Source: Obrimoposthia wandeli | Lineage: Eukaryota | Reading direction: 5' to 3' | Length of the DNA: 64,000 nt | NCBI GenBank assembly: GCA_977020255.1 | Contig: CDROCS010001101.1 | Location: 248,001-312,000 of the forward strand | Notes under the pieces: model-generated | The model's database searches: none | Seen by the model: the letters and a program-made list of their open reading frames with translations, nothing else | What the model was told of the DNA's origin: nothing | Made by a program: the position numbers and the translations under genes | Shown here: piece by piece, positions 18,555-33,198 of the stretch | How positions within the stretch are numbered: the stretch's first letter is position 1 | Layout of the letters: every line of letters begins with the position of its first letter

Positions 18555-20027
18555 ATGCGTAATGAGAAAAATTCAATTACTAAATTAATTTTAAACATAA
18601 TATACATGACCTTGATGTTTATCACTTCCCATACATACACCTATGCAAACAGCTCAGCATCAATCAAGACTGTACCTATTTATCCCTTCTCTCAAGATCA
18701 ACTGCACCTATACGACAAGCTTAAAAGTGCTAATAAAGATCAACTACTGTTTTTTAAAAATAATCGGCTCAATCTATCCGGTCTTACATTATTGAGCTTA
18801 TTAACTGATCTCGGCTTTAGGCAAGACTCTATACTATCCAACAATGAAAAAGCGAATATAGACGCAACAGATAAAGCCCTTACTCTTGCGCTTTATCACA
18901 TAGCTTCGCAATCACAGGGAAATCAATTAAGATCACCAGCAAATAAACCCGAGGATTTTAAAGCTGCGCTAAATAACGATACCCTTTCCGCCTATATTGA
19001 TTCGGCAATGCCACAATTTAACGCAGTCATTCGATTAAGGCAGGCAATTAACAAATACAAGAAAATGAAATATGTAAACTGGCCGCCTATCACGGAAAAA
19101 TTTAGCCCGCAATTAGGTCAAGCGCATGCAGAAGTGAAGATACTCAGGCATAAGTTAATGACCTTAGAGGATTTGAATACTACCCCTACTTCTAAACATA
19201 GAATAAACATATTTGATCAAAGCATCATTGACGGTATAAAGCATTTCCAGCGCCGCAATGGGTTAAAGGCCACAGGTAAACTGAATGTTCATACAATAGA
19301 TGCCTTAAACCAAACCATAACTACGCGTATCAACAAACTTCAAATTAACTTGTGGCGTTGGCTTTCTCTACCGCGTATTCCGCCAACCAAATACATCATG
19401 GTCAACATCCCTGCGTTTAATTTAGCGCTCATAGATAAGGGTAAGCCTTTAATTGAAATGAAAGTCATTGTTGGTAAACCCAGTAACCAGACACCAGTCA
19501 TGATCACTGAAGTTCATTCCGTCACTTTCAATCCGACATGGACGCCTACGCGCAATATAATAAATGATGATCTGTTGCCGTTGCATAACAAGAATAATAC
19601 GGCGTTAAAAAATCTTAACTTCCATCTCGTCAAAGGCGATGGTGTCAACGCTGTATACAAAGAGATACCAACTAACCTACAAGCTATGTTAGGACAATAC
19701 CGCCTAGTTCAACGCGCAGGCAATAATAACGCGCTAGGCAAGGTACGGTTTAATATTAAAAACAACAACGCTATCTTCTTACATGATACGCCAACCAAGT
19801 ATCTGTTTAATCGCCATAATAGAGCCTTGAGTCACGGCTGTATTCGTTTAGAAAATCCTAACGACTTACTCTCTAGCTTACTTATCAGTAGTGGTAATAA
19901 TAAGCTTCAAACTAAGCACGTGAAACTAGCTAGTTCACTCCCCGTCTTTATTACTTATCAAACAGCATGGATTGATAACTTAGGAAAAGCTAACTTCCGT
20001 AACGACCTGTATGAGCATGATAAGTAA
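18555..20027 (+). CDS. L,D-transpeptidase, YcbB/LdtD-like paralog 1
   Basis: Signal-like N-terminus; PG-binding FQRRNGLKATG; VNIP; VIVGKP; catalytic FLHDTP...SHGCIRL. Confidence 0.9.
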   Translation: MRNEKNSITKLILNIIYMTLMFITSHTYTYANSSASIKTVPIYPFSQDQLHLYDKLKSANKDQLLFFKNNRLNLSGLTLLSLLTDLGFRQDSILSNNEKANIDATDKALTLALYHIASQSQGNQLRSPANKPEDFKAALNNDTLSAYIDSAMPQFNAVIRLRQAINKYKKMKYVNWPPITEKFSPQLGQAHAEVKILRHKLMTLEDLNTTPTSKHRINIFDQSIIDGIKHFQRRNGLKATGKLNVHTIDALNQTITTRINKLQINLWRWLSLPRIPPTKYIMVNIPAFNLALIDKGKPLIEMKVIVGKPSNQTPVMITEVHSVTFNPTWTPTRNIINDDLLPLHNKNNTALKNLNFHLVKGDGVNAVYKEIPTNLQAMLGQYRLVQRAGNNNALGKVRFNIKNNNAIFLHDTPTKYLFNRHNRALSHGCIRLENPNDLLSSLLISSGNNKLQTKHVKLASSLPVFITYQTAWIDNLGKANFRNDLYEHDK

Positions 20028-20199
20028 CAAATGTCAATAATTACTGACAATATCTCACAAAAAAAATAGCTAATAATGAGATAGTACTCTAGTGTTATGT
20101 GTATGCTTCTAAAGCAAGGGGCATTAAGACGTAAAGATAATAAAATCAATGTATTAATCTATGTTTGTGAATTTAAAGCAATTGATTGGAGTACTAAAA

Positions 20200-20388
20200 A
20201 TGAATAAATTATCAATGTTTATCCACGATTTTATCGAAGACGAAAGTGGTCTAACTGCGGTTGAGTATGCTGTCGCTGGTGGTTTGGTCGTAGCAGGTCT
20301 TGTTGGGGCATTTACAGCGTTAGGTACTGCTGCTGACGCTAGAATTGATACGTTAACGACTGCGATTGGTGGGACGCCTCCTACTTAA
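20200..20388 (+). CDS. flp: Flp type IVb pilin 1
   Basis: 62 aa; ESG|LTAVEY prepilin cleavage and Flp motif; GGAG RBS before ATG 20200. Confidence 0.93.
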   Translation: MNKLSMFIHDFIEDESGLTAVEYAVAGGLVVAGLVGAFTALGTAADARIDTLTTAIGGTPPT

Positions 20389-20439
20389 GTCCCCCATGGA
20401 ATCACATGCTCGAGCTTGATACTCAACAGTAGCGATACT

Positions 20440-20538
20440 ATGGAATGTAATACGTTGTTAATATTTAACCAACGTTACCAACGTATTCCAAATAAACAAC
20501 AGCCCTTAGTGTGTTCACAAGCGGCTCTACATTTGTGA
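20440..20538 (+). pseudogene. Relic of prepilin peptidase tadV (32 codons, 42-nt in-frame deletion, truncated)
   Basis: MECNTLLI-FNQRYQRIPNK matches TadV MESNTLLI[14 aa]FDLRYQRIPNK. Confidence 0.85.
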
Positions 20539-20566
20539 ACTTAAAGTAGTTTATTAGAGTACTAAC

Positions 20567-20755
20567 ATGAATAAATTAACCATATTTATCAAAAATTTTA
20601 TCGAAAGCGAAAGTGGATTAACAGCAGTTGAATACGCTATCGCGGGTGGATTAGTTGTTGCTAGCCTTATAGGTGCTTTTATTGCTTTAGGTAACGCAGC
20701 TGATACAAGTATTGATTCGTTGACAACGACACTTGGTGGAACGCCTCCTACTTAA
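20567..20755 (+). CDS. flp: Flp type IVb pilin 2
   Basis: 62 aa; ESG|LTAVEY motif; 35 of 45 mature residues identical to pilin 1. Confidence 0.93.
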   Translation: MNKLTIFIKNFIESESGLTAVEYAIAGGLVVASLIGAFIALGNAADTSIDSLTTTLGGTPPT

Positions 20756-20806
20756 GTCCCCCATGGAAGCACAACCTCGAACTCGATACTCAACAGTGGT
20801 GATATT

Positions 20807-21358
20807 ATGGAAAGTAATACGTTGTTAATAAATGTCACTGCATCACTTGTAATGCTAAGTATTACTTTATATTTTGACCTACGTTATCAACGAATTCCAA
20901 ACAAATTATGCCTGATAGCATTATTGTTAGGATTAATCATCCACACTTTATTTAATGGCCTATCTGGGTTGGCTCAAGCACTATCTGGCGCAGCATTAGC
21001 GCTTGTTGTTTTACTTCCAGCCTTCGCCTTTCGCCTTCTAGGTGCTGGCGACGTCAAAATAATGATCGCTATAGGTGCTCTCTCAGGCCCACTCATTATT
21101 ATTTGGTCCATTGCATATGCGATAGTTTTTGGTGTATTTACCAGTGTATTAATCGCGATAAAAAAGGTAGGCCTCAAAGGGTTAAAATTAACATTTTATC
21201 GCTATACCGTTTGCCTATACTCTGGAAAGTACTTTAAGCCTGAAGAAGGTGATATGGGCGCAGTAAAAGTACCCTATGCGCCAGCATTAATGCTCGGTTG
21301 GTTACTTGCCTGCTATTTAGACCCCGACATCAATAGCGCACTAAACTCTTTTATATAA
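20807..21358 (+). CDS. tadV: Prepilin peptidase TadV/CpaA (A24 family)
   Basis: FDLRYQRIPN and LGAGDVK carry the two catalytic Asp; follows flp. Confidence 0.92.
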   Translation: MESNTLLINVTASLVMLSITLYFDLRYQRIPNKLCLIALLLGLIIHTLFNGLSGLAQALSGAALALVVLLPAFAFRLLGAGDVKIMIAIGALSGPLIIIWSIAYAIVFGVFTSVLIAIKKVGLKGLKLTFYRYTVCLYSGKYFKPEEGDMGAVKVPYAPALMLGWLLACYLDPDINSALNSFI

Positions 21359-21394
21359 AAATGATTCATCTGTTTAAATCATATAGGCATTGCC

Positions 21395-22747
21395 ATGACC
21401 GCTATATCCGCAGATACAAACAACAACCAAAATGTGTCCACCTCAATAGAATGTGCCAACTTAATATCACAGATACCTGACCGGTTAGCCCGACGCCCAA
21501 CTACAATTGAAGAAACAGGTCTCTCGACTCAACTCCTTATCCAGCTGTTAATAAAACATATACAAGTATTGAACGTAGTAACGATTAGAGACCTCTCGAC
21601 GGTGTTAGCATTGAGTGGAGGCATAGTTCAATCGTTAATCGATATAGCCAAAGATTTATCTTGGATAGAGAACAGGCAAAGTGCTAAAAGTGGTCAAATG
21701 CGTTATGCACTATCTAATATAGGAACAAATGAGGCGGAATTAGCATTCTCTCACAGTGGTTATGTCGGTCCAGCACCAGTGCCCCTAGCTCAATACGTCA
21801 ATATTGTCACTCAGCAAACCAGTAGACATACTCAAATAACCAAAATACGCATGCAAGCAAAATTTAAAGATTTAATGTTTTCTGATGAATTAACAAATGC
21901 TATCGGTCCAGCATTAAATTCATCAAAGCCAATATTAATATATGGAAAACCAGGTGTAGGTAAAAGTTACCTCTGTCGCCATTTAAATAAATTATTTGAG
22001 GATGATGTGTTAATACCATCTGCGATTGAAATTCATAATAACATAATCCAAATTTATGACCCTCAAGTACACGCCCTTGCAGACTGCACAATGAACGATG
22101 ATGCTGAAAATGCACAATTCAATCTAGCCCAAGGCTATGATCCCCGTTGGTACCTATGCCGTCGTCCCCTGCTGGTGACTGGTGGTGAGCTCACCGAATC
22201 AATGCTAGAAGTAAACTTCGATCCAACAAGTAAAACCTACAAAGCACCTCTGCAAATAAAAGCTAATAATGGGATTTTATTACTCGATGATCTTGGTCGG
22301 CAAAAAATTACGCCAGTGGCATTATTCAACCGCTGGATTATTCCATTAGAAGAGCGTCGAGACTTTTTATCGTTACCTAACGGCGTCCATTTTGAAATAC
22401 CATTTGAGCTTATATTATTATTCTCAACAAATTTAGAACCTGCAGCCCTTGTTGATGATGCATTCTTACGCCGTCTTGGTTATAAAATTGAATTTAACCC
22501 ACTTGTACTACATGACTACCAAACTCTGTGGTTTAACGTTTGCTCTGAGCTCAAATTAACCTGTACAGCTGAAACATTTAATTATCTTATTAAGAGCTAT
22601 CACTTGGCCACAAACAAGCCATTTCTACCCTGTTTCCCCAGGGATTTATTAAGTATTGTCAGTGATCAAATCAAGTTTAACGAACTTAAACCTGCTGTCG
22701 ATAATCAATTAATCGATACAGCTTGGAAACATTATTTTGTTAATTGA
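21395..22747 (+). CDS. Uncharacterised AAA+ family ATPase associated with Flp pilus loci
   Basis: Walker A GKPGVGKS; Walker B LLLDD; FSTNL sensor; DDAFLRRL arginine-finger-like motif. Confidence 0.8.
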   Translation: MTAISADTNNNQNVSTSIECANLISQIPDRLARRPTTIEETGLSTQLLIQLLIKHIQVLNVVTIRDLSTVLALSGGIVQSLIDIAKDLSWIENRQSAKSGQMRYALSNIGTNEAELAFSHSGYVGPAPVPLAQYVNIVTQQTSRHTQITKIRMQAKFKDLMFSDELTNAIGPALNSSKPILIYGKPGVGKSYLCRHLNKLFEDDVLIPSAIEIHNNIIQIYDPQVHALADCTMNDDAENAQFNLAQGYDPRWYLCRRPLLVTGGELTESMLEVNFDPTSKTYKAPLQIKANNGILLLDDLGRQKITPVALFNRWIIPLEERRDFLSLPNGVHFEIPFELILLFSTNLEPAALVDDAFLRRLGYKIEFNPLVLHDYQTLWFNVCSELKLTCTAETFNYLIKSYHLATNKPFLPCFPRDLLSIVSDQIKFNELKPAVDNQLIDTAWKHYFVN

Positions 22748-22780
22748 ATCCACTAAATCTATCAGATAGGTAGGTATCAA

Positions 22781-23590
22781 ATGAATAAAAAAACACTACT
22801 CTCTATCTTGTTATCTGCCGTATTTGGTATCGGCGCAATAATGGTTGCACGTAATTGGTTAGAGGTTAATAAACCAGAAGCTGCAGAAAATGAAGTCTAT
22901 GTGGCGATTGCAACGATGGACTTAAACATAGGAACAGAAATTGATTCAAAGCATATAGTATTAAAAGCTATCCCGAAATCACTAGCAACTAAAAGTACTA
23001 TTGAAAATAGGGAAGATATATTAGGCATGATAGCGAAAGATCCAATATACAAAGGCGATCTAATTCGCAAAGAGCGCTTATTTGTCAAAGGTGAAGGTAG
23101 TACATTAGCCAGTTTAATTACAACTAATATGCGGGCTATCAGCATTCGTGTTAATGATGTTGTCGGTGTTGCGGGTTTCCTATTACCTGGCAACAGAGTG
23201 GATATTCTAAGTACGATGGAAAGTAACGGTAAAATCACAACTGAAGTTGTTCTCGCAAATATCAAGATTTTAGCGATTGATCAACGTGCGGCACAAAGTG
23301 AAAACACACCACAATTAGTCAGAGCAGTTACCGTCGAGGTACGTTTAGACCAAGCAGAATCACTACTAACAGCAAAAAGCCAAGGCAGTTTACAGTTAGC
23401 GCTTCGTAATCCAATTGATAATAATATGACAGTAAACAAAGCTCCAGTATTAGCCAAACAGCCTATCGATACTGTCACTAAGCCTATAAAAAAAGTACAA
23501 CCGCTTCGAGTACGTAGTACACAATCAAATAATAAAAAAGTTGAGATAATCCGTGGGACAGAGCAAGAATCTGTTCAACTTAAGATCTAA
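22781..23590 (+). CDS. rcpC: Flp pilus assembly protein RcpC/CpaB
   Basis: N-terminal TM; SAF domain; MRAISIRVNDVVGVAGFLLPGNRVDIL. Confidence 0.93.
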   Translation: MNKKTLLSILLSAVFGIGAIMVARNWLEVNKPEAAENEVYVAIATMDLNIGTEIDSKHIVLKAIPKSLATKSTIENREDILGMIAKDPIYKGDLIRKERLFVKGEGSTLASLITTNMRAISIRVNDVVGVAGFLLPGNRVDILSTMESNGKITTEVVLANIKILAIDQRAAQSENTPQLVRAVTVEVRLDQAESLLTAKSQGSLQLALRNPIDNNMTVNKAPVLAKQPIDTVTKPIKKVQPLRVRSTQSNNKKVEIIRGTEQESVQLKI

Positions 23591-23607
23591 TGGTAAGCCC
23601 TAAGTAG

Positions 23608-25074
23608 GTGACGAATATGATGGTATTTATCCCAGATATAAATTTATATTTTAAACGGTTAAAGTGTCTTTCACTATGTCTAGTATTTTGTTTATCTACC
23701 AGCAACGCTTTTGCAGGCGGACCAACTGCGTTAGATGATGATAGTGTTAAAATACCTATTTTCAAATCTAAAAATTTGAAAACAAAACAGCCAATACACC
23801 GAGTTTCTGTTGGTAACCCCGCAATAGCAGATATATTAATATTGCGTAGTAGCGAGCTATACATTGTCGGTAAACAGCTTGGCACTACTAATGTAATGAT
23901 TTGGGATGAAGAGGACAATTTAGTTGATGTAATGAACTTAGAAGTCACACATGATCTTAACAGTCTAAGAAAACGCTTACATCAATTCTTACCTAATGAA
24001 GAAATAGGCGTACAAACATCCCAAGGACAACTGCTAGTGAGTGGCCAATCTACTTCATTATCAAAAATGAATACTGCAATTCAACTCGCGCAAGGCTATG
24101 CAACAGCAGCAACAACAACTAAAAATAAAAGTGTTGTGATTAACATGATATCGATTGGCGGTGGACAACAAGTCATGCTTGAAGTAACCGTTGCTGAAGT
24201 AAGTACCGAAGTAGCGCGTAATTTAGACGCAAATACATTGCTCGCATTTACCGGTTCAGACTTTACAGGGGGGGCGATCTCAGGTAACTCAGGTATTTTC
24301 CCATCTATAGATTCAGGGATATTCGCCAGTTATTTAAGTGGTGACATGCTATTTAACTTTACCCTCGATATCGCTAAAAGTAATGGTTTAGCAAAAATAT
24401 TAGCCGAACCAAATATCACAGCATTAAGTGGCCAAAAGGCGGAGTTTTTATCCGGTGGTGAATTTCCGATTCCAGTACCAAGTGAAGATGGAACAACAAT
24501 TGAATACAGAGATTTCGGTGTCGGGGTAAGTTTCGTCCCAACGATCCTCGATTCAGGGAAAATCAACCTCAGTTTAAAAGTCCTTGTAAGTGAAATAAGT
24601 AACGTTAATAGCCTAGGAGTCTCACCAATCGGGTCCTCTGCAGCCATTATAGTGCCTTCCTTGATTAAACGTTCAGCAGAAACCACCATTGAACTTGCTG
24701 ATGGTCAATCAATCGCTATTGGCGGATTACTTAGTGACAACTTGAGAGACTCGGTATCTAAAGTGCCTGGTTTAGGCGATATCCCTATTCTTGGCCAGCT
24801 GTTTAGTAGCCATGAATACATTAGCGGTCAAACTGAGTTAGTCATTATGGTAACACCCAGGTTAGTACGCCCATTTAATAAAGAAGGCGTCCCATTACCT
24901 ACCGATGGTTTTGTGCCTGTATCTGACATGGAATTCTACTTACTTGGTAAAATGACCGATCAAGAAAGCGCTAAAAATAATACATCTCCGAATGAAAAAG
25001 ATGACTCTAACAGTTCGACTATTACACCGAATACAGGTGGTACAGAACAACAGTATGGTCATCAGTTAAATTAA
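23608..25074 (+). CDS. rcpA: Tad secretin RcpA/CpaC
   Basis: GNPAIADI; QQVMLEVTVAEV; AEPNITALSGQKAEFLSGGEFP; KVPGLGDIPILGQLF; start position uncertain. Confidence 0.94.
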   Translation: MTNMMVFIPDINLYFKRLKCLSLCLVFCLSTSNAFAGGPTALDDDSVKIPIFKSKNLKTKQPIHRVSVGNPAIADILILRSSELYIVGKQLGTTNVMIWDEEDNLVDVMNLEVTHDLNSLRKRLHQFLPNEEIGVQTSQGQLLVSGQSTSLSKMNTAIQLAQGYATAATTTKNKSVVINMISIGGGQQVMLEVTVAEVSTEVARNLDANTLLAFTGSDFTGGAISGNSGIFPSIDSGIFASYLSGDMLFNFTLDIAKSNGLAKILAEPNITALSGQKAEFLSGGEFPIPVPSEDGTTIEYRDFGVGVSFVPTILDSGKINLSLKVLVSEISNVNSLGVSPIGSSAAIIVPSLIKRSAETTIELADGQSIAIGGLLSDNLRDSVSKVPGLGDIPILGQLFSSHEYISGQTELVIMVTPRLVRPFNKEGVPLPTDGFVPVSDMEFYLLGKMTDQESAKNNTSPNEKDDSNSSTITPNTGGTEQQYGHQLN

Positions 25075-25083
25075 GGAAATAGC

Positions 25084-25341
25084 ATGAAACACATTAGCCT
25101 TGTACTTATATTAGCGCCACTATTTGTCGCATGTAACCAAGTACCCGATTATCAATTATCTGCATCGACATTACACATTCAAGAACTTCAGATATTAGAT
25201 CCACAAGCCCCTGTATCAAATGATGGTCTTGTGAGTGATATATCTGGTGTGTATGGCGAAAACATAATCCAGAGCTACCAGCGCAGTACATATGACGCTA
25301 AGACAGCTCGTGATATTGAACATGCAGAACAGACTGAATAG
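25084..25341 (+). CDS. Small lipoprotein of unknown function in the tad operon
   Basis: 85 aa; lipobox FVAC; AAGGA RBS; 9-nt gap after rcpA and 8-nt gap before tadG. Confidence 0.75.
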   Translation: MKHISLVLILAPLFVACNQVPDYQLSASTLHIQELQILDPQAPVSNDGLVSDISGVYGENIIQSYQRSTYDAKTARDIEHAEQTE

Positions 25342-25349
25342 GTGCGAAT

Positions 25350-26651
25350 ATGATAGCTAATCGACATATTAATAACGGTACTAAACAACATGGTAATGTA
25401 TTAATCATGTTCACGGTTAGTCTATTTGCATTAGTAATTTTGGCCGCGTTAGTACTTGATGGCGGCCATATGTTATTAAATAAAGGCAAGATGCAAAACC
25501 TTGTTGATAGCGCGGCGCTGCATGCGGCGAAAGAAGTTGGAGATAACGCGACCCAAGATGAAGCAAGGCTAGCTGTAGTTAATATATTAAGACTTAATTT
25601 AGCACATTCAGATCAACACGAGCTATTAACTGAGATTGATATAACGAACGGAAATATTAATATAACAAGCAATTCGATAACAAATCAGCTTAAAGTCGAG
25701 TTTTCATTACGCCCTGATCCATTTGTTTCAAGTACAAGTTCAGACGCTGAATATGTCATGGTCACTTTATCTCAGGTTGTACTTAATAATTTTTTAGCCC
25801 AAGCGATAAGCTTCAACAAAGAAATATCGGCAACAGCTATGGCAGGCCCAAGTACACACCTCGAAGATTGCTTTGATGACCTTGTCCCTTTAGTCGTTTG
25901 CGCCACAGATACCAGTGACACTATCGATTATGGATTTACAAAAGGTGATTTGCATGTGATGAAAATGGGGTCAAAAGGTTCATCCCCTATTGGCCCTGGT
26001 AACTTCCAACTAATTCGTTTGGATGGCGCCAGTGGTGCTGATGATATAAGAAAAGCCCTAGCTGGGGAAGTGGACGGTGAGTCTTGTTTTTCTTTAGGAG
26101 AAAATAACGGTTCTGTGCCCACAGAACCGGGTAATAAAGTAGGCCCTGTATCTGACGGCCTGAATACGCGTATGGGTCAGTGGCCTAATGGAAATAAAAT
26201 CAATGAGGATGATCATCCTAGAGATGTTGATACCTGCGAAGGGCCTCATATCGAATTAGACTCCGCTGGAACAGGGCTCGAGGCAGATGCAGAGACCAAG
26301 CGTTATAGCTATGAAACTTATAGTGAAAATAACAGTTATTGCCATAGTCCAGCAACTGGTATGGGAGGCTCTATAAACGATAGCAGTCCCGCTCTCATAG
26401 ATCGAAGAGTGTTAAATGTAGTGATTGGTAGTTGTACTGGGGAAACAAACGGTCAAAACAATTTAGATTATTTAGGAGTGGCCTGTTTTTTCCTAACTCA
26501 GACGACAGAGCATACAGGGAAAGGATCATATGTTGTTGGTGAATTTATTGAAAATTGCGCAGCAGAAGGAGCCCCCTCAGGAGACCCTGTTGATGAAGAC
26601 GGTTTATTCAAATACGTTTTATATCATGTTAATGGCAGCACCGATTCTTGA
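25350..26651 (+). CDS. tadG: TadG family pilus assembly protein (pilin-like adhesin)
   Basis: QHG|NVLIMF pilin-like N-terminus; LVLDGG...MQNLVDSAALHAA Tad_N motif. Confidence 0.85.
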   Translation: MIANRHINNGTKQHGNVLIMFTVSLFALVILAALVLDGGHMLLNKGKMQNLVDSAALHAAKEVGDNATQDEARLAVVNILRLNLAHSDQHELLTEIDITNGNINITSNSITNQLKVEFSLRPDPFVSSTSSDAEYVMVTLSQVVLNNFLAQAISFNKEISATAMAGPSTHLEDCFDDLVPLVVCATDTSDTIDYGFTKGDLHVMKMGSKGSSPIGPGNFQLIRLDGASGADDIRKALAGEVDGESCFSLGENNGSVPTEPGNKVGPVSDGLNTRMGQWPNGNKINEDDHPRDVDTCEGPHIELDSAGTGLEADAETKRYSYETYSENNSYCHSPATGMGGSINDSSPALIDRRVLNVVIGSCTGETNGQNNLDYLGVACFFLTQTTEHTGKGSYVVGEFIENCAAEGAPSGDPVDEDGLFKYVLYHVNGSTDS

Positions 26652-26660
26652 GGATACACG

Positions 26661-27116
26661 ATGAAAGCGCACATAAAACATAAAAATAAACAAACGGGTT
26701 TAGCTATCGTTGAGTTCACGATCATCGTGCCTTTTTTACTGCTTCTCATATTTGCTACAGCAGAATTTGGGCGCCTACTTTATCAATATACAGCGCTAAA
26801 CAACACTATTCGTAACGCAAATCGTTATTTAATGACTAATGCAAGGCTAGCTACAGGGGTTGTTTCTATCTCTGCTGATGTTGAGGTAGATATCGAAAAG
26901 CTCATTGTTTATGGTAATTTGACATCAACAACAGAGTTATTACCTAACTTATCAGCCAGTGATATAACAATTACAACAAGCGGAGATTTCGTCACACTCA
27001 ATGTTTCCTATCCTTGGCAGCCGATCTTTGCAACTTCGCTTTCAACATTTGGCTTTGGCAACGACATAGATTTGACTTTCCCATTAATATCGACTTATAC
27101 AATGAGGGCTTTATGA
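26661..27116 (+). CDS. tadE: TadE family minor pilin
   Basis: QTG|LAIVEF motif. Confidence 0.88.
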   Translation: MKAHIKHKNKQTGLAIVEFTIIVPFLLLLIFATAEFGRLLYQYTALNNTIRNANRYLMTNARLATGVVSISADVEVDIEKLIVYGNLTSTTELLPNLSASDITITTSGDFVTLNVSYPWQPIFATSLSTFGFGNDIDLTFPLISTYTMRAL

Positions 27117-27610
27117 ATACGAAACAATATGCCCAACATAAAAAAAGAAACACTCAACGTGGTATATATGCTGTTGAATTCGCGATTGTCGGCAGTTTAT
27201 TTTTTCTATTATTATTCGCGGTTTTAGAAATAGCACGTTTATTTTTCACTTGGAATGTGCTTACAGAAGTCACCAGACGAAGCGCTAGATTAGCCGTTGT
27301 GTGTGACTTAGACCAAACTAATATCGCCTCTCATACGGAGATGATGAATGCAGCATTGTTTAATAACAACCCACTTATAACAAATTTAACCACAGCCAAT
27401 ATACAAGTTGAATATCTTGGCCTAACAGGCCTACCTGCAACGACTTTCAGTACGATACGTTATGTAAGAGCAAATATAATTAATTATCAGCATCAACTAT
27501 TACTTCCCGGTCTATCCTTTACATTAAGCTCCCCCACTTTTTCTACAACACTCCCAAGAGAAAGCCTAGGAGTTACAAGATTTGGATTAACTCAATGCAG
27601 CCCAGTGTAA
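27113..27610 (+). CDS. tadF: TadE/TadF family minor pilin
   Basis: QRG|IYAVEF motif; start at ATG 27113 overlaps the tadE stop (ATGA). Confidence 0.82.
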   Translation: MNTKQYAQHKKRNTQRGIYAVEFAIVGSLFFLLLFAVLEIARLFFTWNVLTEVTRRSARLAVVCDLDQTNIASHTEMMNAALFNNNPLITNLTTANIQVEYLGLTGLPATTFSTIRYVRANIINYQHQLLLPGLSFTLSSPTFSTTLPRESLGVTRFGLTQCSPV

Positions 27611-27685
27611 TCAATGTAGCCGTGTTTAAACCTAACTTAATTATTTCGTTTAAGTTGTCGTTGATATTTAAAAAAGGAATCTAAC

Positions 27686-28918
27686 ATGAACAAGCCAAGT
27701 TCAAATAACATCCTTGGATTTGATAAAACATTACCTTGTCATGATCAGGCCGCATCTCAGCCAATGATATTACCTTATCCTTTAAGCGCGTTAATTATTT
27801 GCCACAATACAAGCATTGAGCTTGAACTAAAAAATTATAGCGCGCTAATATCTAACTTCGATGTCACATTTTCAGTTTCATTACCTGATAGTTTAAACAG
27901 CTTCAATCTCATTATATTAGTTGTTGTCAAAGATAATGATGTGACCAAACAAATAATTGAAAAAATTTCTGCTAATGATATAAAATTTATCATACTTGCC
28001 GACAATATTAAAAATGATCTGCTTAGAGTGGCTATTAATTACCATGTAGAGGACATGATTTCGATCGCTGATACCGAAAAGGAACTCTATTTATCTTTAT
28101 TAAAAACAGCAAATGAGCTAATAAAAACAAGTAAAATAGCACCTGTATTTACCATTATTAATGGTAAACCAGGATCAGGAGCAAGCTTTATTACTAGTTG
28201 CCTAGCTGAGCTCAGTGCTAATTTAAGTACAGAAGAAATAGCAGTTATAGATGCTGATCTAAACTACGGAACGCTGGCTGATACGTTTAATTTCGAACCG
28301 AATTACTTTATCACTGATGCTCTATCCGACTTAGACCAGTTAGATAGCACCGCGATTAGCGCAATAATGTCAAAACGAGGAAACCTAGGCTTACTGCCCA
28401 GCAAACCCTTTACCTTATTAAATTCAGATATAGGTGCCCTAGACCAACTCCCCCAACTAATATGGAAAATAAAATTAAATCATGATTTAGTATTAATTGA
28501 TTTATCTCGAGGCCTTGAGCCTTATGCAATACCGATCATTAATTTATCAGATAACATCATTATTACTGTGCAACAGAATATCCTCAGCCTACGTGAAGCC
28601 AAAATACTCATACAACAATTAACAATGAACCTCGGGATCCCAATCAACAAACTACACATTATCGTCAACCGATTTTCAAATAAAAACAACAATATTTCAA
28701 TCAATGATATTAAGAAAGTACTCGATATAGATAGCCTATTCATTGTGAGCAATAACTATGAATTAGCAAATGAAGGGATAAATTCAGGATCACCTCTTTT
28801 AAAAGTCGCCAATCACAAAGTAATTAAAGCTGAAATATCAAACATAATAAGAGAAATTTTCCCGCTCAATCTTCCTGGCAAAGAGCAATCAATACTTTCT
28901 AAAATATTTAGGAGATAA
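27686..28918 (+). CDS. tadZ: TadZ/CpaE MinD-like localisation ATPase
   Basis: Degenerate receiver-like N-terminus; deviant P-loop NGKPGSGAS; IDADLNYG; IIVNR. Confidence 0.88.
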   Translation: MNKPSSNNILGFDKTLPCHDQAASQPMILPYPLSALIICHNTSIELELKNYSALISNFDVTFSVSLPDSLNSFNLIILVVVKDNDVTKQIIEKISANDIKFIILADNIKNDLLRVAINYHVEDMISIADTEKELYLSLLKTANELIKTSKIAPVFTIINGKPGSGASFITSCLAELSANLSTEEIAVIDADLNYGTLADTFNFEPNYFITDALSDLDQLDSTAISAIMSKRGNLGLLPSKPFTLLNSDIGALDQLPQLIWKIKLNHDLVLIDLSRGLEPYAIPIINLSDNIIITVQQNILSLREAKILIQQLTMNLGIPINKLHIIVNRFSNKNNNISINDIKKVLDIDSLFIVSNNYELANEGINSGSPLLKVANHKVIKAEISNIIREIFPLNLPGKEQSILSKIFRR

Positions 28919-28920
28919 TA

Positions 28921-30246
28921 ATGGAATTTGTCAGCAACAATCATAATGACCCTTTTTCAATGCTCACTAGTATTGATATGGAGACGAAGCAAGAGATCTT
29001 CAGTCAACTCCTTACTCAACTTGACTTATCGGTACTCGAAACGTTAGATCACGATGTAGCAAAACAAAAAATTGAAGAGTCCTGCTACTTATTTTTAAAT
29101 AAACAAACTAGACCTATAAATTTAAATATTAGAAACATTTTAATTAAATTAATTACGGATGAAATACTTGGTTTAGGCCCCTTAGAAACACTACTCGAAG
29201 ATCCAAGTATTGCCGATATATTAGTCAACAGATACGACCGTATTTTTGTTGAACGTAACGGAAAACTCGAACAAGTCGCCGTTCAATTTCATGATGATAA
29301 GCACTTGCTCAGTATCATTGATCGGATTGTATCTGGCGTAGGTCGACGAATTGATGAATCATCCCCCATGGTTGATGCTCGGCTAAAAGACGGCAGCCGA
29401 ATTAATGCAATCATCCCCCCACTTGCTTTAGATGGTCCTGCGCTGTCAATTCGTCGATTTACCGTTGATAAATTACAAGTAGAACAACTCATTGAATTCG
29501 ATTCGATTAGTAAAAACATGGCTGATTTAATCAATGCTGCTGTTGTCGGTAAACTCAACATTCTCATTTCCGGTGGTACAGGTAGCGGTAAAACAACACT
29601 ACTAAATATACTGTCAGGGTTTATCCCTAATGATGAAAGAATCATTACTATTGAAGATTCTGCAGAGCTTCAATTACAACAGACTCATACAGTAAGATTA
29701 GAAACTAGACCTGCAAACATTGAAGGTACAGGTGAAGTAAACCAACGTGATTTAGTCAAGAACTGCTTACGTATGCGTCCAGATCGGATTGTTATTGGTG
29801 AAATCCGCGGCAGTGAAGCGATTGATATGCTCGCGGCGATGAATACCGGCCATGAAGGTTCAATGACCACCTTACACGCTAACACTCCTCGAGATGGACT
29901 GGGAAGATTAGAAAATATGGTATGTATGGCAGGATTTGACATGCCAATTAAGAATATTAGAACTCAAATATCGTCAGCAATAAACCTTGTAGTACAGCTG
30001 CAACGCCAAGAAGATGGCAAACGACGAGTGACCAGTATTCAAGAAGTGACAGGTATGGAAGGCGACATGATTACCATGTCGGAAATATTCTGTTTTAGGC
30101 GTGAAGGTAGATCAGAGGATGGTTCAATCCGTGGTAAATTCATCGCGACAGGTGTGGTCCCAACATTTATCCATGACTTAAAATCCAAGGGAATCGATAT
30201 TCCACACAGTGTATTCACAACTGACTTGGCAAATAATGGGTTCTAG
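28921..30246 (+). CDS. tadA: Tad pilus motor ATPase TadA/CpaF
   Basis: GGTGSGKTT; TIEDSAEL; RMRPDRIVIGEIRG; MNTGHEGSMTTLHAN. Confidence 0.96.
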   Translation: MEFVSNNHNDPFSMLTSIDMETKQEIFSQLLTQLDLSVLETLDHDVAKQKIEESCYLFLNKQTRPINLNIRNILIKLITDEILGLGPLETLLEDPSIADILVNRYDRIFVERNGKLEQVAVQFHDDKHLLSIIDRIVSGVGRRIDESSPMVDARLKDGSRINAIIPPLALDGPALSIRRFTVDKLQVEQLIEFDSISKNMADLINAAVVGKLNILISGGTGSGKTTLLNILSGFIPNDERIITIEDSAELQLQQTHTVRLETRPANIEGTGEVNQRDLVKNCLRMRPDRIVIGEIRGSEAIDMLAAMNTGHEGSMTTLHANTPRDGLGRLENMVCMAGFDMPIKNIRTQISSAINLVVQLQRQEDGKRRVTSIQEVTGMEGDMITMSEIFCFRREGRSEDGSIRGKFIATGVVPTFIHDLKSKGIDIPHSVFTTDLANNGF

Positions 30247-30256
30247 GTGAGGATGT

Positions 30257-31225
30257 ATGGATAATCAACTGTTATTTTTATTATTAGTATTTGGAACTGT
30301 TGTTCTTTTATTCCAAAGTTTATTTATCTCTGTCTATAATCCAAAACGCGCTAGTGCAAAAAATATCCGTAAGCACTTAAAATCGCTGGCTAATGATAAT
30401 AGTGATATTGCAACTGAAATTCTACTCAATAAAAAACTTGAAAAATTACCCCCTTTTTTACAATGGCTTGAATCTCAATCTTGGGTAAATAACCTAAGTT
30501 ACAAAATGGAATTATCAGGTTCTAACCTATTAGGCTATCAATACTTATTAATAACACTGGCATCTTGCTGCATTGCTGCTGTTTCGATGTGGTTTATCAC
30601 CCTCGATATTGTCGTGTCGCTCTTCTCCATTATTTTTATTCTTTTTGTCATGCATATAATTATCAATAGAAATATTAATAAACGTATGGAAAACATCGAG
30701 CATGACTTTCCTGAAGTATTAGATGTCCTAAAACGTGGACTACAAGCTGGTTACGCTTTTAGTGATTCATTAAAGTTAGTATTTGAAGAAACTGATGGCG
30801 ACTTATCTGATGAATTTAGAATCATGTTTAATCGTATTAATTATGGTAATGATATTCATACGGCTTTACTTTCCTTTGTTAAACGCGTGCCGACTACATC
30901 CGCGATGGCTTTTTCTAGTGCTGTATCAATACAAAAAGAAACGGGTGGTAATTTAGCTGAAAATATAGATAACTTATCTAAAATTATTCGTCAACGATTC
31001 ACCTTCCAAAGACGCGTTAAAACACTATCTGCAGAAGGACGGCTTTCAGGCTGGATCCTCTCACTAACTCCTTTCATTCTTTTTGCTGGTCTATATTTCA
31101 TATCCCCAGATTACGCCAACGTATTAATGGGCACTCCGGAAGGTCTAGATTTGTTGAAATGGGGTGGTATCGGTATGTTTGTAGGGATCTGGTGGATAAG
31201 CCGACTTATTAAGATAGAGGTCTAA
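30257..31225 (+). CDS. tadB: Tad inner-membrane platform protein TadB
   Basis: T2SSF domain; QKETGGNLAE; LSAEGRLSGWIL. Confidence 0.92.
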   Translation: MDNQLLFLLLVFGTVVLLFQSLFISVYNPKRASAKNIRKHLKSLANDNSDIATEILLNKKLEKLPPFLQWLESQSWVNNLSYKMELSGSNLLGYQYLLITLASCCIAAVSMWFITLDIVVSLFSIIFILFVMHIIINRNINKRMENIEHDFPEVLDVLKRGLQAGYAFSDSLKLVFEETDGDLSDEFRIMFNRINYGNDIHTALLSFVKRVPTTSAMAFSSAVSIQKETGGNLAENIDNLSKIIRQRFTFQRRVKTLSAEGRLSGWILSLTPFILFAGLYFISPDYANVLMGTPEGLDLLKWGGIGMFVGIWWISRLIKIEV

Positions 31226-31228
31226 ACA

Positions 31229-32206
31229 ATGGAACAAATTCAAATAATGCTTGCGACTATAATGTCTAATCCAAGTATCACTGAATGGGGTATTTATTTA
31301 GTTGCTGCCCTAGCAGGTATTACGTTAGCGGTTGCCGTTTCTTACTTATTTTCCGGTTTGTATTCACCCGTTAGAGCGCAAATTAATAAATTATCTAAGT
31401 CACCGTCATCATCAACTGATATGGGTAAGGAATATGAATCTTCCTTAGAACATACAATTAAGAAACTTGATTCAATCCCTTTTATTAATAAACGTTATCA
31501 AGGCGATTCATCCGCTAAGGAACTGCTCATTCATGCTGGTTTTCACTCCCAAGGTGCATTAAAAATTTATAACGCGATAAAATTATTATCTTTATTACTT
31601 GGATTAGCAATTGCGATCTTTAGCATTAGGCAGATACCAAATTTATCAATTAGAGCAGAAATACTCATTATCATTGCCGGTTTAAGTATCGGTTATTTAT
31701 TACCTGGTATCATTCTATCTAAACTTGCCACACACCGCATGAATGATTTGCGTAAATACTTTCCTGATGCACTCGATTTACTGGTCGTTTGTTGCGAAGC
31801 GGGACTTGGTTTACTTGAATCCTTCCAAAGAGTAAGCAGAGAGTTACAGCTTTCTCACCCAAATCTTTCTTTTGAACTTGGACTTGTCTGTAGCAAAGTC
31901 AGATATGGTCTAACATTACAACAAGCACTTCAAGAGTTCAGTTATCGTACGGGACTTGAAGATATTAAAGGGCTGAATTCTGTCATCGTACAGAGCTTAA
32001 AGTTAGGTACTGGTGTGGCAGCCACTATCAGAGTATATGCTGATGAATACAGAGAAAAACGCTTGCAAAGAGCCGAAGAGCAAGCTGCAAAATTAGGTGT
32101 GAAAATGATATTTCCTATGATGTGTTGTATCTGGCCCTCTTTTTTTATCGTTGCCATTGGCCCTGCAGTGTTAAATGTCATAAGAGTTTGGGATAAAGCA
32201 TTTTAA
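31229..32206 (+). CDS. tadC: Tad inner-membrane platform protein TadC
   Basis: FPDALDLLVVCCEAGLGL; AEEQAAKLGVKMIFPM. Confidence 0.93.
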   Translation: MEQIQIMLATIMSNPSITEWGIYLVAALAGITLAVAVSYLFSGLYSPVRAQINKLSKSPSSSTDMGKEYESSLEHTIKKLDSIPFINKRYQGDSSAKELLIHAGFHSQGALKIYNAIKLLSLLLGLAIAIFSIRQIPNLSIRAEILIIIAGLSIGYLLPGIILSKLATHRMNDLRKYFPDALDLLVVCCEAGLGLLESFQRVSRELQLSHPNLSFELGLVCSKVRYGLTLQQALQEFSYRTGLEDIKGLNSVIVQSLKLGTGVAATIRVYADEYREKRLQRAEEQAAKLGVKMIFPMMCCIWPSFFIVAIGPAVLNVIRVWDKAF

Positions 32207-32223
32207 AGTAAAGGATAATTATA

Positions 32224-33198
32224 ATGATTAAATGGTACCTCATATTGCTCATATTGCTATCAGGTTGCACGACAACAAGCGGACAACCTGAGTTACCGTC
32301 ACTTGCTGACATCCCCGCTGAATCACGTGAAACGTTAATACAAAATGCTCGCAATGCTGAACAAAATAAGCAATTTGATAAAGCGATAGTGCTGTATATT
32401 AAATCACTTGATCAAGAATACGACGATGATACCGCAGAAGAAAATAAAATCCCCAACACACAAATATTTTATAACATTGGCATACTTGAAGTAAAACAAG
32501 GTCATAATGAACTCGCTATGACCGCCTTTAAACATTTACTTTTACAAGAGCCGGAGCATCACTTAGCTCAAGCGCAATTAGGTATATTATATCTAGAAAA
32601 TAAACAAAAAAAACAAGCCATTAAACTATTAACTCAAGCAATTACAGCCGATCAATTAAGATTAGGCAATACAATCAACAACGATTACAAATTTGTATCT
32701 CTTGATACCAAATCCCCCTTGCCAGCTTATAGTGCTTTCGCTGTTATACAAGATCTAGAGGGCCAACATCAACAAGCAATTCAAACTCAGCGCCTTGTTA
32801 TCCCGCTATCTGAACGAGATCCATTTGTTTATACTAATATCGGTTACTCTTATTACTTAGCTGGTAATTTTGTTGAAGCTGAAATTCAATATAAGAAAGC
32901 CATTGATATAGACAATCAATTTAAACGAGCATGGCTAAATCTAGGATTAGTTTACACGCGTAAAGGTATGTATAGCAAAGCACTGCAAACATTAAAGCAA
33001 GTTATGCCTACAGAACACGCGTATAATGATATAGGTTACTTTCTGATATTAGAAGGTCGTTACCGTGAAGCTGAGTACTTTATTGAACGCGCAATCGAGC
33101 TTTCTCCAAGTTACTTCGTGAAAGCAAATGTGAATCTTGAAAACCTTAAATTACAGATGAACAAAGACATCGATCTGGCTTATTCAAGTGAAGAATAA
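32224..33198 (+). CDS. tadD: TPR lipoprotein TadD (secretin pilotin)
   Basis: Lipobox LSGC; multiple TPR repeats; last gene of the tad operon. Confidence 0.85.
   Translation: MIKWYLILLILLSGCTTTSGQPELPSLADIPAESRETLIQNARNAEQNKQFDKAIVLYIKSLDQEYDDDTAEENKIPNTQIFYNIGILEVKQGHNELAMTAFKHLLLQEPEHHLAQAQLGILYLENKQKKQAIKLLTQAITADQLRLGNTINNDYKFVSLDTKSPLPAYSAFAVIQDLEGQHQQAIQTQRLVIPLSERDPFVYTNIGYSYYLAGNFVEAEIQYKKAIDIDNQFKRAWLNLGLVYTRKGMYSKALQTLKQVMPTEHAYNDIGYFLILEGRYREAEYFIERAIELSPSYFVKANVNLENLKLQMNKDIDLAYSSEE

What the first reader, a model, noticed from the sequence alone, without database searches (positions are those of the whole stretch)
21395..22747. A third ATPase inside the Tad operon: uncharacterised AAA+ protein between tadV and rcpC
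Seen: a 450-aa protein with Walker A (GKPGVGKS), Walker B (LLLDD) and AAA+-like STN and RR motifs. It is embedded in the operon (36- and 33-bp gaps), in addition to TadZ and TadA. Established: the canonical Aggregatibacter/Caulobacter Tad systems use only TadA/CpaF as motor (bidirectional in Caulobacter) plus TadZ/CpaE. Similar genes carry, as far as I recall, only a predicted Flp-associated chaperone ATPase label; I know of no experimental function. Inference: a distinct Tad subtype with an accessory remodeller (retraction aid, pilin extraction or machine disassembly). With the LDT and the small lipoprotein, this is the best candidate for an undescribed system here.
Basis: partly seen in the sequence, partly recalled or inferred. 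Interest (0 to 1): 0.7.

Follow-up and report, generated by a model that had tools for sequence, protein, structure and literature searches.

The report
Unnamed third ATPase in Tad operons
A gene inside this Moritella pilus (Tad) operon encodes an unstudied ATP-using protein with a DNA-binding-type head; the same gene marks whole branches of Tad systems in many bacteria, and nobody seems to know what it does.

Summary
ORF 21395-22747 (+) encodes 450 aa with Walker A, Walker B, sensor-1 and an Arg pair. It lies 36 and 33 bp from tadV and rcpC, inside a complete Tad/Flp operon.

It is not a TadA or TadZ paralogue. The model shows an N-terminal MarR-like winged helix (residues 44-122) joined to an AAA+ module. 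The nearest solved structure is an uncharacterised Pyrococcus hexamer (8p49, Z 19). Lon, Clp-D2, bEBP, NorQ and ComM modules tie behind it.

No Pfam or NCBIfam model reaches its cut-off, and eight paper searches found no study. The family is large: 1314 clusters at E<=1e-30.

In sampled Pseudomonadota, 44 of 50 copies lie in Tad loci, in two gene orders. 41 of 43 carrier genomes have RcpC, against 143 of 401 overall. About 29% of RcpC-positive genomes carry the gene. On a TadA tree the carrier loci form two near-pure clades, so a Tad subtype is real.

Stand-alone copies also exist. Two are in genomes where no Tad genes were found; others carry FHA or HDOD domains. Walker B is DD, not DE.

My reading, at moderate confidence, is an ATP-gated regulatory switch for Tad production. 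A motor or retraction aid is not shown. The function is untested.

The parts
21395..22747 (+). The finding: a 450-aa winged-helix + AAA+ ATPase gene
   Evidence: ORF and translation. More than 4300 homologues. AlphaFold models with pLDDT 78 for the whole protein and 88.7 for the AAA+ part.
21524..21760 (+). N-terminal MarR-like winged helix-turn-helix, residues 44-122
   Evidence: VIA-align gives Z 12.7, rmsd 2.0 A over 77 residues to MarR-DNA 5h3r, and many other MarR/PadR chains score Z 10-12. Model pLDDT is about 90-95 here. No MarR family appears among the Pfam matches listed in either scan.
21944..21967 (+). Walker A, GKPGVGKS (G184-S191)
   Evidence: G184, G187, G189 and K190 are invariant in 23 sequences down to 30% identity.
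22139..22192 (+). Family-specific conserved insert between strands beta2 and beta3 (D249, R251, R257, P258, G263, E265, L266; 'RP..TGGEL')
   Evidence: These residues are invariant across the family. The insert lies in a beta-rich stretch of the model. Its role is unknown.
22274..22291 (+). Walker B, ILLLDD (D298-D299; DD, not DE)
   Evidence: D298 and D299 are invariant.
22421..22432 (+). Sensor-1 strand, FSTN (N346)
   Evidence: N346 is invariant. It follows a predicted pre-sensor-1 beta-hairpin, E324-326 / E332-334.
22469..22474 (+). R359-R360, candidate arginine finger
   Evidence: Both residues are invariant. The finger role is inferred from their position in the AAA+ fold.
20202..20388 (+). 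flp1 pilin (the likely start is the ATG at 20202)
   Evidence: Flp_Fap hit, E 1e-5. It is one copy of a tandem duplication.
20567..20755 (+). flp2 pilin
   Evidence: Flp_Fap hit. It is the duplicate of flp1.
20807..21358 (+). tadV prepilin peptidase
   Evidence: Peptidase_A24, E 3e-17.
22781..23590 (+). rcpC/cpaB
   Evidence: RcpC, E 2e-27; TIGR03177, E 6e-66.
23608..25074 (+). rcpA secretin
   Evidence: Secretin, E 2e-42.
25084..25341 (+). Small lipoprotein after the secretin (lipobox LFVAC)
   Evidence: Translation. Such ORFs also follow the secretin in Tad loci that lack the ATPase.
25350..27610 (+). tadG, tadE and tadF pseudopilin-like genes
   Evidence: Tad and TadE Pfam hits.
27686..28918 (+). 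tadZ/cpaE-like ParA/MinD ATPase
   Evidence: Weak AAA_31 and CbiA hits. Its position matches tadZ in all related loci.
28921..30246 (+). tadA/cpaF motor ATPase
   Evidence: T2SSE, E 1.5e-63.
30257..33198 (+). tadB, tadC and tadD
   Evidence: T2SSF twice, then a TPR protein.

Best explanation
The gene encodes a cytoplasmic two-part protein. Its head is a MarR-like winged helix. Its body is an AAA+ ATPase that probably forms a six-membered ring. It is a lineage-specific accessory of a Tad pilus subtype and has been inherited together with the Tad motor.

The most likely role is an ATP-gated regulatory switch, not a third motor. In this reading, nucleotide binding and slow hydrolysis set the ring's state. 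The head then docks either on DNA at tad promoters or on a cytoplasmic Tad part such as TadZ, TadA, TadB or TadC. That would couple cell signals to whether pili are made.

What is shown: the architecture, the motif conservation, the tight link to Tad loci and the co-inheritance with TadA clades. What is inferred: ring formation, switch-like behaviour, the target, and any signal input.
For: Architecture:
- Winged helix at residues 44-122: Z 12.7, rmsd 2.0 A.
- The AAA+ body is nearest to the cryo-EM hexamer 8p49: Z 19.0 over 250 residues at 2.8 A. That hexamer is described in bioRxiv 10.1101/2023.06.09.544317.
- Regulator ATPases FleQ, NtrC4, DmpR and VpsR are among the next tier at Z 14.6-15.3.
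- The catalytic motifs are invariant, and Walker B is DD rather than DE. From general knowledge, DD is typical of switch-type ATPases such as DnaA and the STAND family; this is an inference.
- The predicted pre-sensor-1 and helix-2 hairpins carry no conserved basic residues.

Link to Tad:
- 80 of 80 genome loci have the order tadV - gene - rcpC.
- 44 of 50 copies from two unbiased samples lie in Tad loci, in two different gene orders, and each order forms one clade of the ATPase tree.
- 41 of 43 carrier genomes have RcpC against 143 of 401 overall, p 3e-18.
- On a TadA tree the label needs 8 changes against 40.8 when shuffled.
- The Tad loci of two genomes with a displaced copy (G410, G723) still fall inside the carrier clades.

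Regulator-like traits:
- Stand-alone copies flanked by unrelated genes in 10 of 11 informative contexts outside Tad loci; transcription units were not tested.
- N-terminal FHA or HDOD fusions.
- Second-messenger genes (GGDEF, HD-GYP, a weak PilZ hit, a cyclase) near about 5 of 11 such contexts.

Expression:
- A contig from a marine metatranscriptome spans flp to rcpA, including this gene, at about 97.5% identity.
Against: - No function has been tested anywhere that I could find.
- The gene sits in the middle of a structural operon with tight spacing. That is more usual for machine parts than for regulators.
- No 10-mer is conserved upstream of flp across 68 loci.
- No sigma-54 consensus was found in the window, and the protein has no GAFTGA loop. 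It is therefore not a classical enhancer-binding protein.
- The winged helix is only mildly basic, with a median pI of 8.4, and shows no sequence-level MarR match. It could equally be a protein-docking domain.
- The structural Z-scores for regulators, Lon, Clp, NorQ and ComM are tied within about 1 unit, so the fold does not choose between them.
- The signalling neighbours are anecdotal.
- The RNA-library contig could derive from DNA, and it does not prove a single transcript.
Confidence: 0.45

Rival explanations
1. Accessory protein remodeller or assembly chaperone. A hexameric AAA+ ring uses ATP to assemble, reset or disassemble cytoplasmic Tad parts (the TadZ hub, the TadA hexamer, the TadB/C platform) or to handle prepilin. 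The winged helix would serve as an adaptor domain. This would resemble ClpV in type VI secretion or EccA in type VII secretion.
For: - The gene is embedded in the operon with 33-36 bp gaps and no terminator-like site.
- It has been co-inherited with TadA clades through two gene orders.
- The AAA+ core and a family-specific insert are extremely conserved, which suggests a conserved partner.
- The fold ties with the protein remodellers Lon, ClpA/ClpB-D2, NorQ and CbbQ at Z 14.3-15.8.
- The pore-facing hairpins lack basic residues, as in protein-handling rather than DNA-handling rings.
Against: - Walker B is DD, not the DE usual in AAA+ motors.
- No aromatic pore-loop motif was identified.
- No VWA partner, which MoxR-type chaperones usually have, was seen in the operon by Pfam.
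- Stand-alone family members occur in two genomes where neither RcpC nor a TadA-type gene was found, and others lie beside housekeeping genes.
- FHA and HDOD fusions are signal-input features, although they do not exclude a regulated chaperone.
Confidence: 0.3
2. DNA-handling enzyme. The ring would be ComM-, RuvB- or MuB-like and would load on or move along DNA through its winged helix, processing DNA taken up by the Tad pilus.
For: - The head has a DNA-binding-type winged-helix fold.
- ComM (Z 14.5), MuB (14.2), RuvB (14.0) and MCM subunits are among the structural matches.
- Flp-pilus-dependent transformation is reported in Micrococcus (PMC4322843, seen).
Against: - The hairpins that contact DNA in MCM and ComM carry no conserved Lys or Arg here.
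- Walker B is DD.
- No competence genes lie in the locus.
- The Z-scores to helicases are no better than those to regulators and proteases.
- From my own knowledge, transformation by Tad pili is not established in these proteobacteria.
Confidence: 0.07
3. Passenger gene. It would be an unrelated regulator or ATPase that inserted into an ancestral Tad operon and has been carried along without any role in pili.
For: Family members exist outside Tad loci, including in two genomes where no Tad genes were found.
Against: - It has been retained in two independent operon positions across Alpha-, Beta- and Gammaproteobacteria.
- It co-diverges with TadA clades.
- 41 of 43 carrier genomes have RcpC.
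- Genomes whose copy has moved away still keep both the gene and a Tad locus of the carrier type.
Confidence: 0.03

Closest known systems
Q8U0N8 of Pyrococcus furiosus (PDB 8p49), an uncharacterised hexameric ATPase
   Same: It is the best structural match by about 3 Z units: Z 19.0, rmsd 2.8 A, 250 of 301 residues of the AAA+ part. It forms a six-membered ring with a flexible N-terminal domain and has no Pfam assignment.
   Different: It is archaeal and shares 17% identity. The family profile does not detect it by sequence among the 60 PDB matches listed. Its function is unknown, so it explains nothing about the role here. I did not examine its genomic context.
Bacterial enhancer-binding proteins that control surface organelles (FleQ, VpsR, FlrC, NtrC family)
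   Same: They combine an AAA+ ring with a DNA-binding domain. Sensory domains sit in front, and FHA-fused examples are known in Myxococcus (my own knowledge). Fold matches are at Z 14.6-15.3. Weak Sigma54_activat hits occur in 17 of 23 family members, all below the cut-off.
   Different: There is no GAFTGA loop. The DNA-binding-type domain is an N-terminal winged helix, not a C-terminal Fis-type HTH. No sigma-54 promoter consensus was found in the window. Walker B is DD. The gene lies inside the operon it would control.
TadA/CpaF and TadZ/CpaE, the two known nucleotide-binding proteins of Tad systems
   Same: They are encoded in the same operon, are cytoplasmic and are P-loop proteins.
   Different: They have different folds and belong to different families. 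TadA is a T2SSE/PilT-type secretion ATPase (E 1.5e-63) and TadZ is ParA/MinD-like. The finding matches neither family. From established knowledge, the canonical Aggregatibacter, Caulobacter and Pseudomonas aeruginosa loci have no such third gene. Recent Tad papers list no such component.
MoxR / BchI / NorQ / CbbQ chaperone-like AAA+ proteins
   Same: They share the AAA+ core, which in this model carries a predicted pre-sensor-1 hairpin. The sequence pattern after Walker B is similar. Matches are at Z 14.3-14.5. There are weak Mg_chelatase and bpMoxR hits and a Midasin AAA profile hit at E 6e-9 over the Walker A region.
   Different: All Pfam scores are below the cut-off. Pfam finds no VWA/MIDAS partner gene in the locus. 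This family also has the winged-helix head and its own conserved insert.
ClpV (type VI secretion) and EccA (type VII secretion), accessory AAA+ proteins of secretion machines
   Same: The parallel is in function only: an extra AAA+ protein encoded with a trans-envelope machine, in addition to its main motor.
   Different: No homology beyond the AAA+ fold was tested or seen. Those proteins have DE Walker B motifs and known substrates (my own knowledge).

Membership tests
AAA+ superfamily | Walker A P-loop GxxGxGK[ST] | tested here: met
   GKPGVGKS is present, and G184/G187/G189/K190 are invariant in 23 diverse members.
AAA+ superfamily | Walker B hhhhDE | tested here: inconclusive
   ILLLDD: both Asp residues are invariant, but the second acidic residue is Asp rather than the usual catalytic Glu.
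AAA+ superfamily | Sensor-1 polar residue and arginine finger | tested here: met
   N346 and R359/R360 are invariant. Their roles are inferred from position in the model.
AAA+ superfamily | Alpha-beta-alpha core plus helical lid fold | tested here: met
   Foldseek gives 414 PDB matches at E<=0.001, and all 50 listed rows are AAA+ proteins. VIA-align gives Z 13-19 over 200-260 residues.
AAA+ superfamily | Ring oligomer (usually a hexamer) | not testable with these tools
   No multimer prediction was available. The nearest structure, 8p49, is a hexamer.
Curated Pfam AAA families (PF00004, PF07728, PF01078, PF00158, PF13191) | Score above the family's gathering cut-off | tested here: not met
   In the window protein every listed Pfam hit is below its cut-off and covers little more than the P-loop region. 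For the other 22 members the scan gives only best E-values, none better than 7e-7. No NCBIfam model comes near its cut-off either.
Bacterial enhancer-binding proteins (sigma-54 activators) | GAFTGA loop in the AAA+ domain | tested here: not met
   The motif is not in the sequence. The conserved insert reads RP..TGGEL instead.
Bacterial enhancer-binding proteins (sigma-54 activators) | A -24/-12 promoter at the target and a C-terminal HTH | tested here: not met
   TGGCAC-N5-TTGC has 0 matches in the window. The DNA-binding-type domain is N-terminal.
MoxR / Mg-chelatase type AAA+ | A partner protein with a VWA/MIDAS domain encoded alongside | tested here: not met
   Pfam finds no VWA domain in any operon protein. 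A cryptic VWA fold in TadG was not tested by structure.
TadA/CpaF secretion ATPases | T2SSE (PF00437) domain | tested here: not met
   There is no T2SSE hit. The true TadA lies at 28921-30246.
TadZ/CpaE | ParA/MinD-type deviant Walker A domain | tested here: not met
   BLASTP against the operon's TadZ gives E 2.4, and there are no CbiA or AAA_31 hits.
MarR-type winged-helix regulators | Winged helix-turn-helix fold | tested here: met
   Z 12.7, rmsd 2.0 A over 77 residues to MarR-DNA, and dozens of MarR/PadR chains score Z 10-12.
MarR-type winged-helix regulators | Sequence-family membership and dimer-forming terminal helices | tested here: not met
   No MarR family is among the 18 Pfam hits of the window protein or among the 25 families that most of the 23 members match (25 of 77 listed). 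The domain is followed by an AAA+ module rather than by dimerisation helices.
Tad/Flp pilus system (the surrounding locus) | Flp pilin, TadV, RcpC, RcpA secretin, TadZ, TadA, TadB, TadC, TadD and TadE/F/G together | tested here: met
   All are present in one + strand block, 20202-33198.

The most novel reading that the evidence does not exclude
The protein is a true third working part of a distinct class of Tad machines. In this reading the winged-helix AAA+ ring docks on the cytoplasmic platform and gates or resets pilus assembly or retraction, possibly in response to c-di-GMP or phosphorylation. About three in ten Tad-bearing proteobacteria would then run their pili by a mechanism absent from the Aggregatibacter, Caulobacter and Pseudomonas models.
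Probability: 0.25. Interest if true: 0.8.

Novelty: new variant of a known kind. Interest (0 to 1): 0.6.

Why it matters
Tad pili drive adhesion, biofilm formation, predation and host colonisation. Current models rest on Aggregatibacter, Caulobacter and Pseudomonas aeruginosa, which have one motor (TadA/CpaF) and one positioning ATPase (TadZ/CpaE).

This work shows that whole clades of Tad systems carry a third, strongly conserved ATPase of a family with no curated model. They include loci in Moritella, Colwellia, Shewanella, Alteromonas, Burkholderia and Rhizobium. I found no study of it.

The family is large, with 1314 clusters at 50% identity. By predicted fold, look-alikes also occur in Planctomycetota, Chloroflexota and other phyla.

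Two outcomes are possible. It may be a regulator, which would give a new kind of AAA+ switch with an N-terminal winged helix. Or it may be a machine part, which would give a new Tad mechanism. Either way it is directly testable in tractable hosts, and it is a clear candidate for a new family definition.

Tried and rejected
- **Paralogue of TadZ or TadA:** rejected, because there is no similarity.
- **Classical sigma-54 activator:** rejected. There is no GAFTGA loop and no -24/-12 consensus.
- **Conserved operator upstream of flp:** tested with 10-mers allowing one mismatch across 68 loci. Nothing exceeded the shuffled controls. The test is crude and would miss lineage-specific sites.
- **Metal site from four invariant Cys residues (C194, C383, C390, C413):** these are invariant among close relatives but not across the family, so I dropped the idea.
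- **L,D-transpeptidase as an obligatory partner:** it is linked upstream in Alteromonadales and Aeromonadaceae loci, and it lies inside the Rhizobium-type locus. It was found in only 4 of 22 other loci.
- **Post-secretin lipoprotein as a partner:** it is equally common without the ATPase.
- **Paper searches:** seven searches on the topic and four papers read found no description. Subscription journals are not covered. One example is a 2025 Plant and Soil paper on a 'novel type' of tad cluster in Pseudomonas chlororaphis.
- **Earlier scan notes:** none bear on this finding.
- **Raw RNA reads of the assembly's own species:** X22 and X23 gave no reads on the stretch, so they are no test.
- **Tool failures:** one search was a parameter error and one search was a failure that I retried.
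- **Not done:** I did not test the Tad link in phyla outside Pseudomonadota.
Full report
**1. Observation**

ORF 21395-22747 (+) is real. It starts with ATG and encodes 450 aa. The gaps to the neighbouring genes are exactly 36 and 33 bp.

Pfam and NCBIfam scans name the neighbours:
- two Flp pilins
- the prepilin peptidase TadV (Peptidase_A24, E 3e-17)
- RcpC/CpaB (TIGR03177, E 6e-66)
- the secretin RcpA
- an 85-aa lipoprotein
- TadG, TadE and TadF
- a ParA-like TadZ
- the motor TadA/CpaF (T2SSE, E 1.5e-63)
- TadB, TadC and a TPR TadD

An L,D-transpeptidase lies upstream and hisG lies downstream. No terminator-like site separates the gene from tadV or rcpC. The window is a Moritella contig: the best homologue is 98% identical and labelled Moritella dasanensis. 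The contig sits inside a 1.35-Gb assembly.

**2. What the protein is**

No Pfam or NCBIfam model reaches its cut-off. There are only weak P-loop hits over residues 164-228. In a scan of 23 diverse family members only generic AAA/P-loop families appear, with a best E-value of 7e-7. The protein is not a paralogue of TadZ (BLASTP E 2.4) or of TadA (no T2SSE hit).

An AlphaFold model (pLDDT 78, and about 90-95 in the N-terminal domain) shows two modules:
- **Residues 44-122** form a MarR-like winged helix-turn-helix. The match to MarR bound to DNA is Z 12.7 at rmsd 2.0 A over 77 residues, and dozens of MarR/PadR chains score Z 10-12.
- **Residues 155-450** form an AAA+ domain with a helical lid.

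I modelled the AAA+ part alone with 30 sequences (pLDDT 88.7). Its best match is the uncharacterised Pyrococcus furiosus hexamer 8p49: Z 19.0, rmsd 2.8 A, 250 residues. Behind it, all within about 1 Z unit of each other, come archaeal LonB (15.8), enhancer-binding proteins FleQ, NtrC4, DmpR and VpsR (14.6-15.3), ClpA/ClpB D2 (14.8-14.9), and NorQ, CbbQ, ComM, MuB and RuvB (14.0-14.5). The domain is therefore an AAA+ module. Its model carries a predicted pre-sensor-1 hairpin. Its matches are spread over proteases, regulators, chaperones and DNA enzymes. The fold alone does not choose between them.

Down to 30% identity the following are invariant: G184/G187/G189/K190, D298-D299, G301-R302-Q303, N312-R313, N346, R359-R360, K364, and a family-specific insert (D249, R251, R257, P258, G263, E265, L266). 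Walker B is DD rather than DE. The protein has no GAFTGA loop.

**3. Family size and annotation**

The word-index search found more than 4300 homologues. They are named only 'AAA family ATPase', 'ATP-binding protein' or 'hypothetical'. A profile search of 1.84 billion representatives found 1314 clusters at E<=1e-30.

ESM Atlas look-alikes share the full two-domain shape (TM 0.66-0.71 over 325-350 residues). They occur in Planctomycetota, Chloroflexota, Acidobacteriota and other phyla, and all are unnamed. I treat these as leads only.

**4. Link to Tad loci**

- All 80 loci fetched from species-representative genomes have the order tadV - gene - rcpC wherever the contig allows. They span Moritella, Colwellia, Shewanella, Psychromonas, Alteromonas, Zobellella, Oceanimonas, Woeseiaceae and others.
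- Those 80 were chosen by two very conserved peptides, so I also took even samples. In 401 genomes of the class, 13 matched the profile and 11 of these were strong, near full-length matches. In 401 genomes of the phylum, 43 matched, one of them (G459) only as fragments.
- Of 50 places fetched with about 9 kb of flank, 44 lie in Tad loci.
- There are two architectures: before rcpC, and after tadC/tadD at the operon end. On a tree of the ATPase the end-of-operon copies form one clade and the copies before rcpC fall into two groups.
- Annotated examples agree. Burkholderia pyrrocinia has flp x3 - peptidase - 'ATP-binding protein' - cpaB. Rhizobium etli has tadC - 'ATP-binding protein'.
- At genome level, 41 of 43 carriers have RcpC against 143 of 401 overall (odds ratio 51, p 3e-18). 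About 29% of RcpC-positive genomes carry the gene.

**5. Is it a Tad subtype?**

I built a TadA tree of 88 loci, 48 with the gene in the locus and 40 without.
- All 28 'before rcpC' loci fall in one well-supported clade of 33.
- 18 of 20 'after tadC' loci fall in one clade of 19.
- The label needs 8 changes, against 40.8 when shuffled.
- Loci in neighbouring clades truly lack the gene; there tadV abuts rcpC.
- The Tad loci of G410 and G723, whose ATPase copies lie elsewhere in the genome, still fall inside the carrier clades.

This is long-term co-inheritance with the motor. It supports a functional link and a real subtype.

**6. Exceptions that shape the reading**

Six of the 50 copies are not in Tad loci.
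- G410 and G439 have tandem pairs. In G410 the pair lies beside a GAF-HD-GYP gene and a HAMP-cyclase gene; the G439 flanks were not annotated.
- G417 and G738 have single copies among housekeeping genes. Neither RcpC nor a TadA-type gene was found in those genomes; they may be incomplete.
- G723 and G426 have Tad loci elsewhere in the genome.

Of ten 50%-cluster representatives looked up, seven had informative flanks, and only one of those (P0185) lies in a Tad locus. That locus has the same gene order as here and a GGDEF gene upstream. P0145, P0200, P0250, P0265, P0179 and P0192 stand alone. The contigs of P0190, P0165 and P0215 told nothing about neighbours.

Some members carry N-terminal FHA (P0190, P0179) or HDOD (P0192) domains. 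The biochemical activity is therefore self-contained, and the family is wider than Tad.

**7. Mechanism**

Several features fit a nucleotide-gated regulatory switch better than a processive motor:
- the winged-helix head
- the DD Walker B (from general knowledge, typical of DnaA and STAND switches)
- stand-alone copies flanked by unrelated genes (transcription units not tested)
- sensory-domain fusions, as in enhancer-binding proteins
- recurrent second-messenger neighbours

I put this reading at 0.45.

Several things count against it. The gene sits in mid-operon. No conserved operator was found upstream of flp. There is no sigma-54 signature. The head is only mildly basic (pI 8.4) and could dock a protein instead of DNA.

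The rivals:
- **Remodeller (0.3).**
- **ComM-like DNA enzyme (0.07).** This is weakened because the hairpins that would face DNA lack conserved basic residues.
- **Passenger gene (0.03).** Sections 4 and 5 make this very unlikely.

**8. Expression**

A 3530-nt contig from a marine metatranscriptome, about 97.5% identical, spans flp, tadV, this gene, rcpC and the start of rcpA. In a second run the flp-tadV part is far deeper than the downstream genes. This fits a transcribed operon with a highly expressed pilin. It does not prove a single transcript, and it does not exclude DNA carry-over. The relative has one flp gene where this genome has two.

**9. Known or new?**

Eight searches of the open literature and four papers on Tad systems gave no description of this component. 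Recent component lists name only TadA and TadZ as ATPases. Subscription journals are not covered.

I class it as a new variant of a known kind: a Tad subtype with an unstudied accessory AAA+ protein. The gene itself is an ordinary member of a large, unnamed family.

**10. Side issues**

- The L,D-transpeptidase is linked only in some lineages.
- The post-secretin lipoprotein is not specific to this subtype.
- Read laying was given 5001 letters.

Noticed in passing
window (whole); G000:C1101:248001-312000: The window is a bacterial (Moritella) contig inside a 1.35-Gb, 6912-contig assembly. It is therefore a contaminant, associate or symbiont of a eukaryote, not the host genome. The closest public protein is 98% identical and labelled Moritella dasanensis.
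   Followed up: partly
window 20158-20463 and 20526-20830: There is a tandem duplication of about 305 nt, 79-83% identical. It holds the flp gene with its ribosome-binding region and the first bases of tadV, which gives two pilin genes. A close relative seen in a marine metatranscriptome has only one copy (it skips 445 nt).
   Followed up: partly
window 18555-20027: An L,D-transpeptidase (YkuD plus a peptidoglycan-binding domain) lies directly upstream of the Tad operon. It holds this position in most Alteromonadales and Aeromonadaceae loci. Independently, a short L,D-transpeptidase sits between tadZ and cpaF in the Rhizobium etli locus (L148:8022-8585). This recurrent Tad-transpeptidase link is unexplained.
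   Followed up: partly
window 25084-25341: An 85-aa lipoprotein (lipobox LFVAC) follows the secretin gene directly. Similar small lipoprotein ORFs follow the secretin in 16 of 20 related Tad loci that lack the ATPase, and a rhizobial paper describes one (sma0164). It may be an RcpB- or pilotin-like part.
   Followed up: partly
L130:8813-11858 and L132:8713-11660: Two small genomes (G410, G439) carry tandem pairs of the ATPase gene away from their Tad locus. In G410 the pair lies next to a GAF-HD-GYP phosphodiesterase and a HAMP-adenylate/guanylate cyclase; the G439 flanks were not annotated. The pair hints at a mixed ring of two subunit types.
   Followed up: partly
P0190, P0179 (FHA) and P0192 (HDOD): Family members from metagenomes have N-terminal FHA or HDOD signalling domains in front of the winged-helix AAA+ body. 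They stand alone, outside any visible Tad locus.
   Followed up: partly
window 26661-27116 and 27014-27610: The tadE and tadF ORFs overlap by about 100 bp as listed. The tadF ORF begins with an upstream TTG, and the TadE-domain match starts at residue 50, so the true start is probably further downstream.
   Followed up: no
L184:358-3691: One family representative (P0145) is encoded directly downstream of dnaA on a metagenome contig. This may be coincidence.
   Followed up: no
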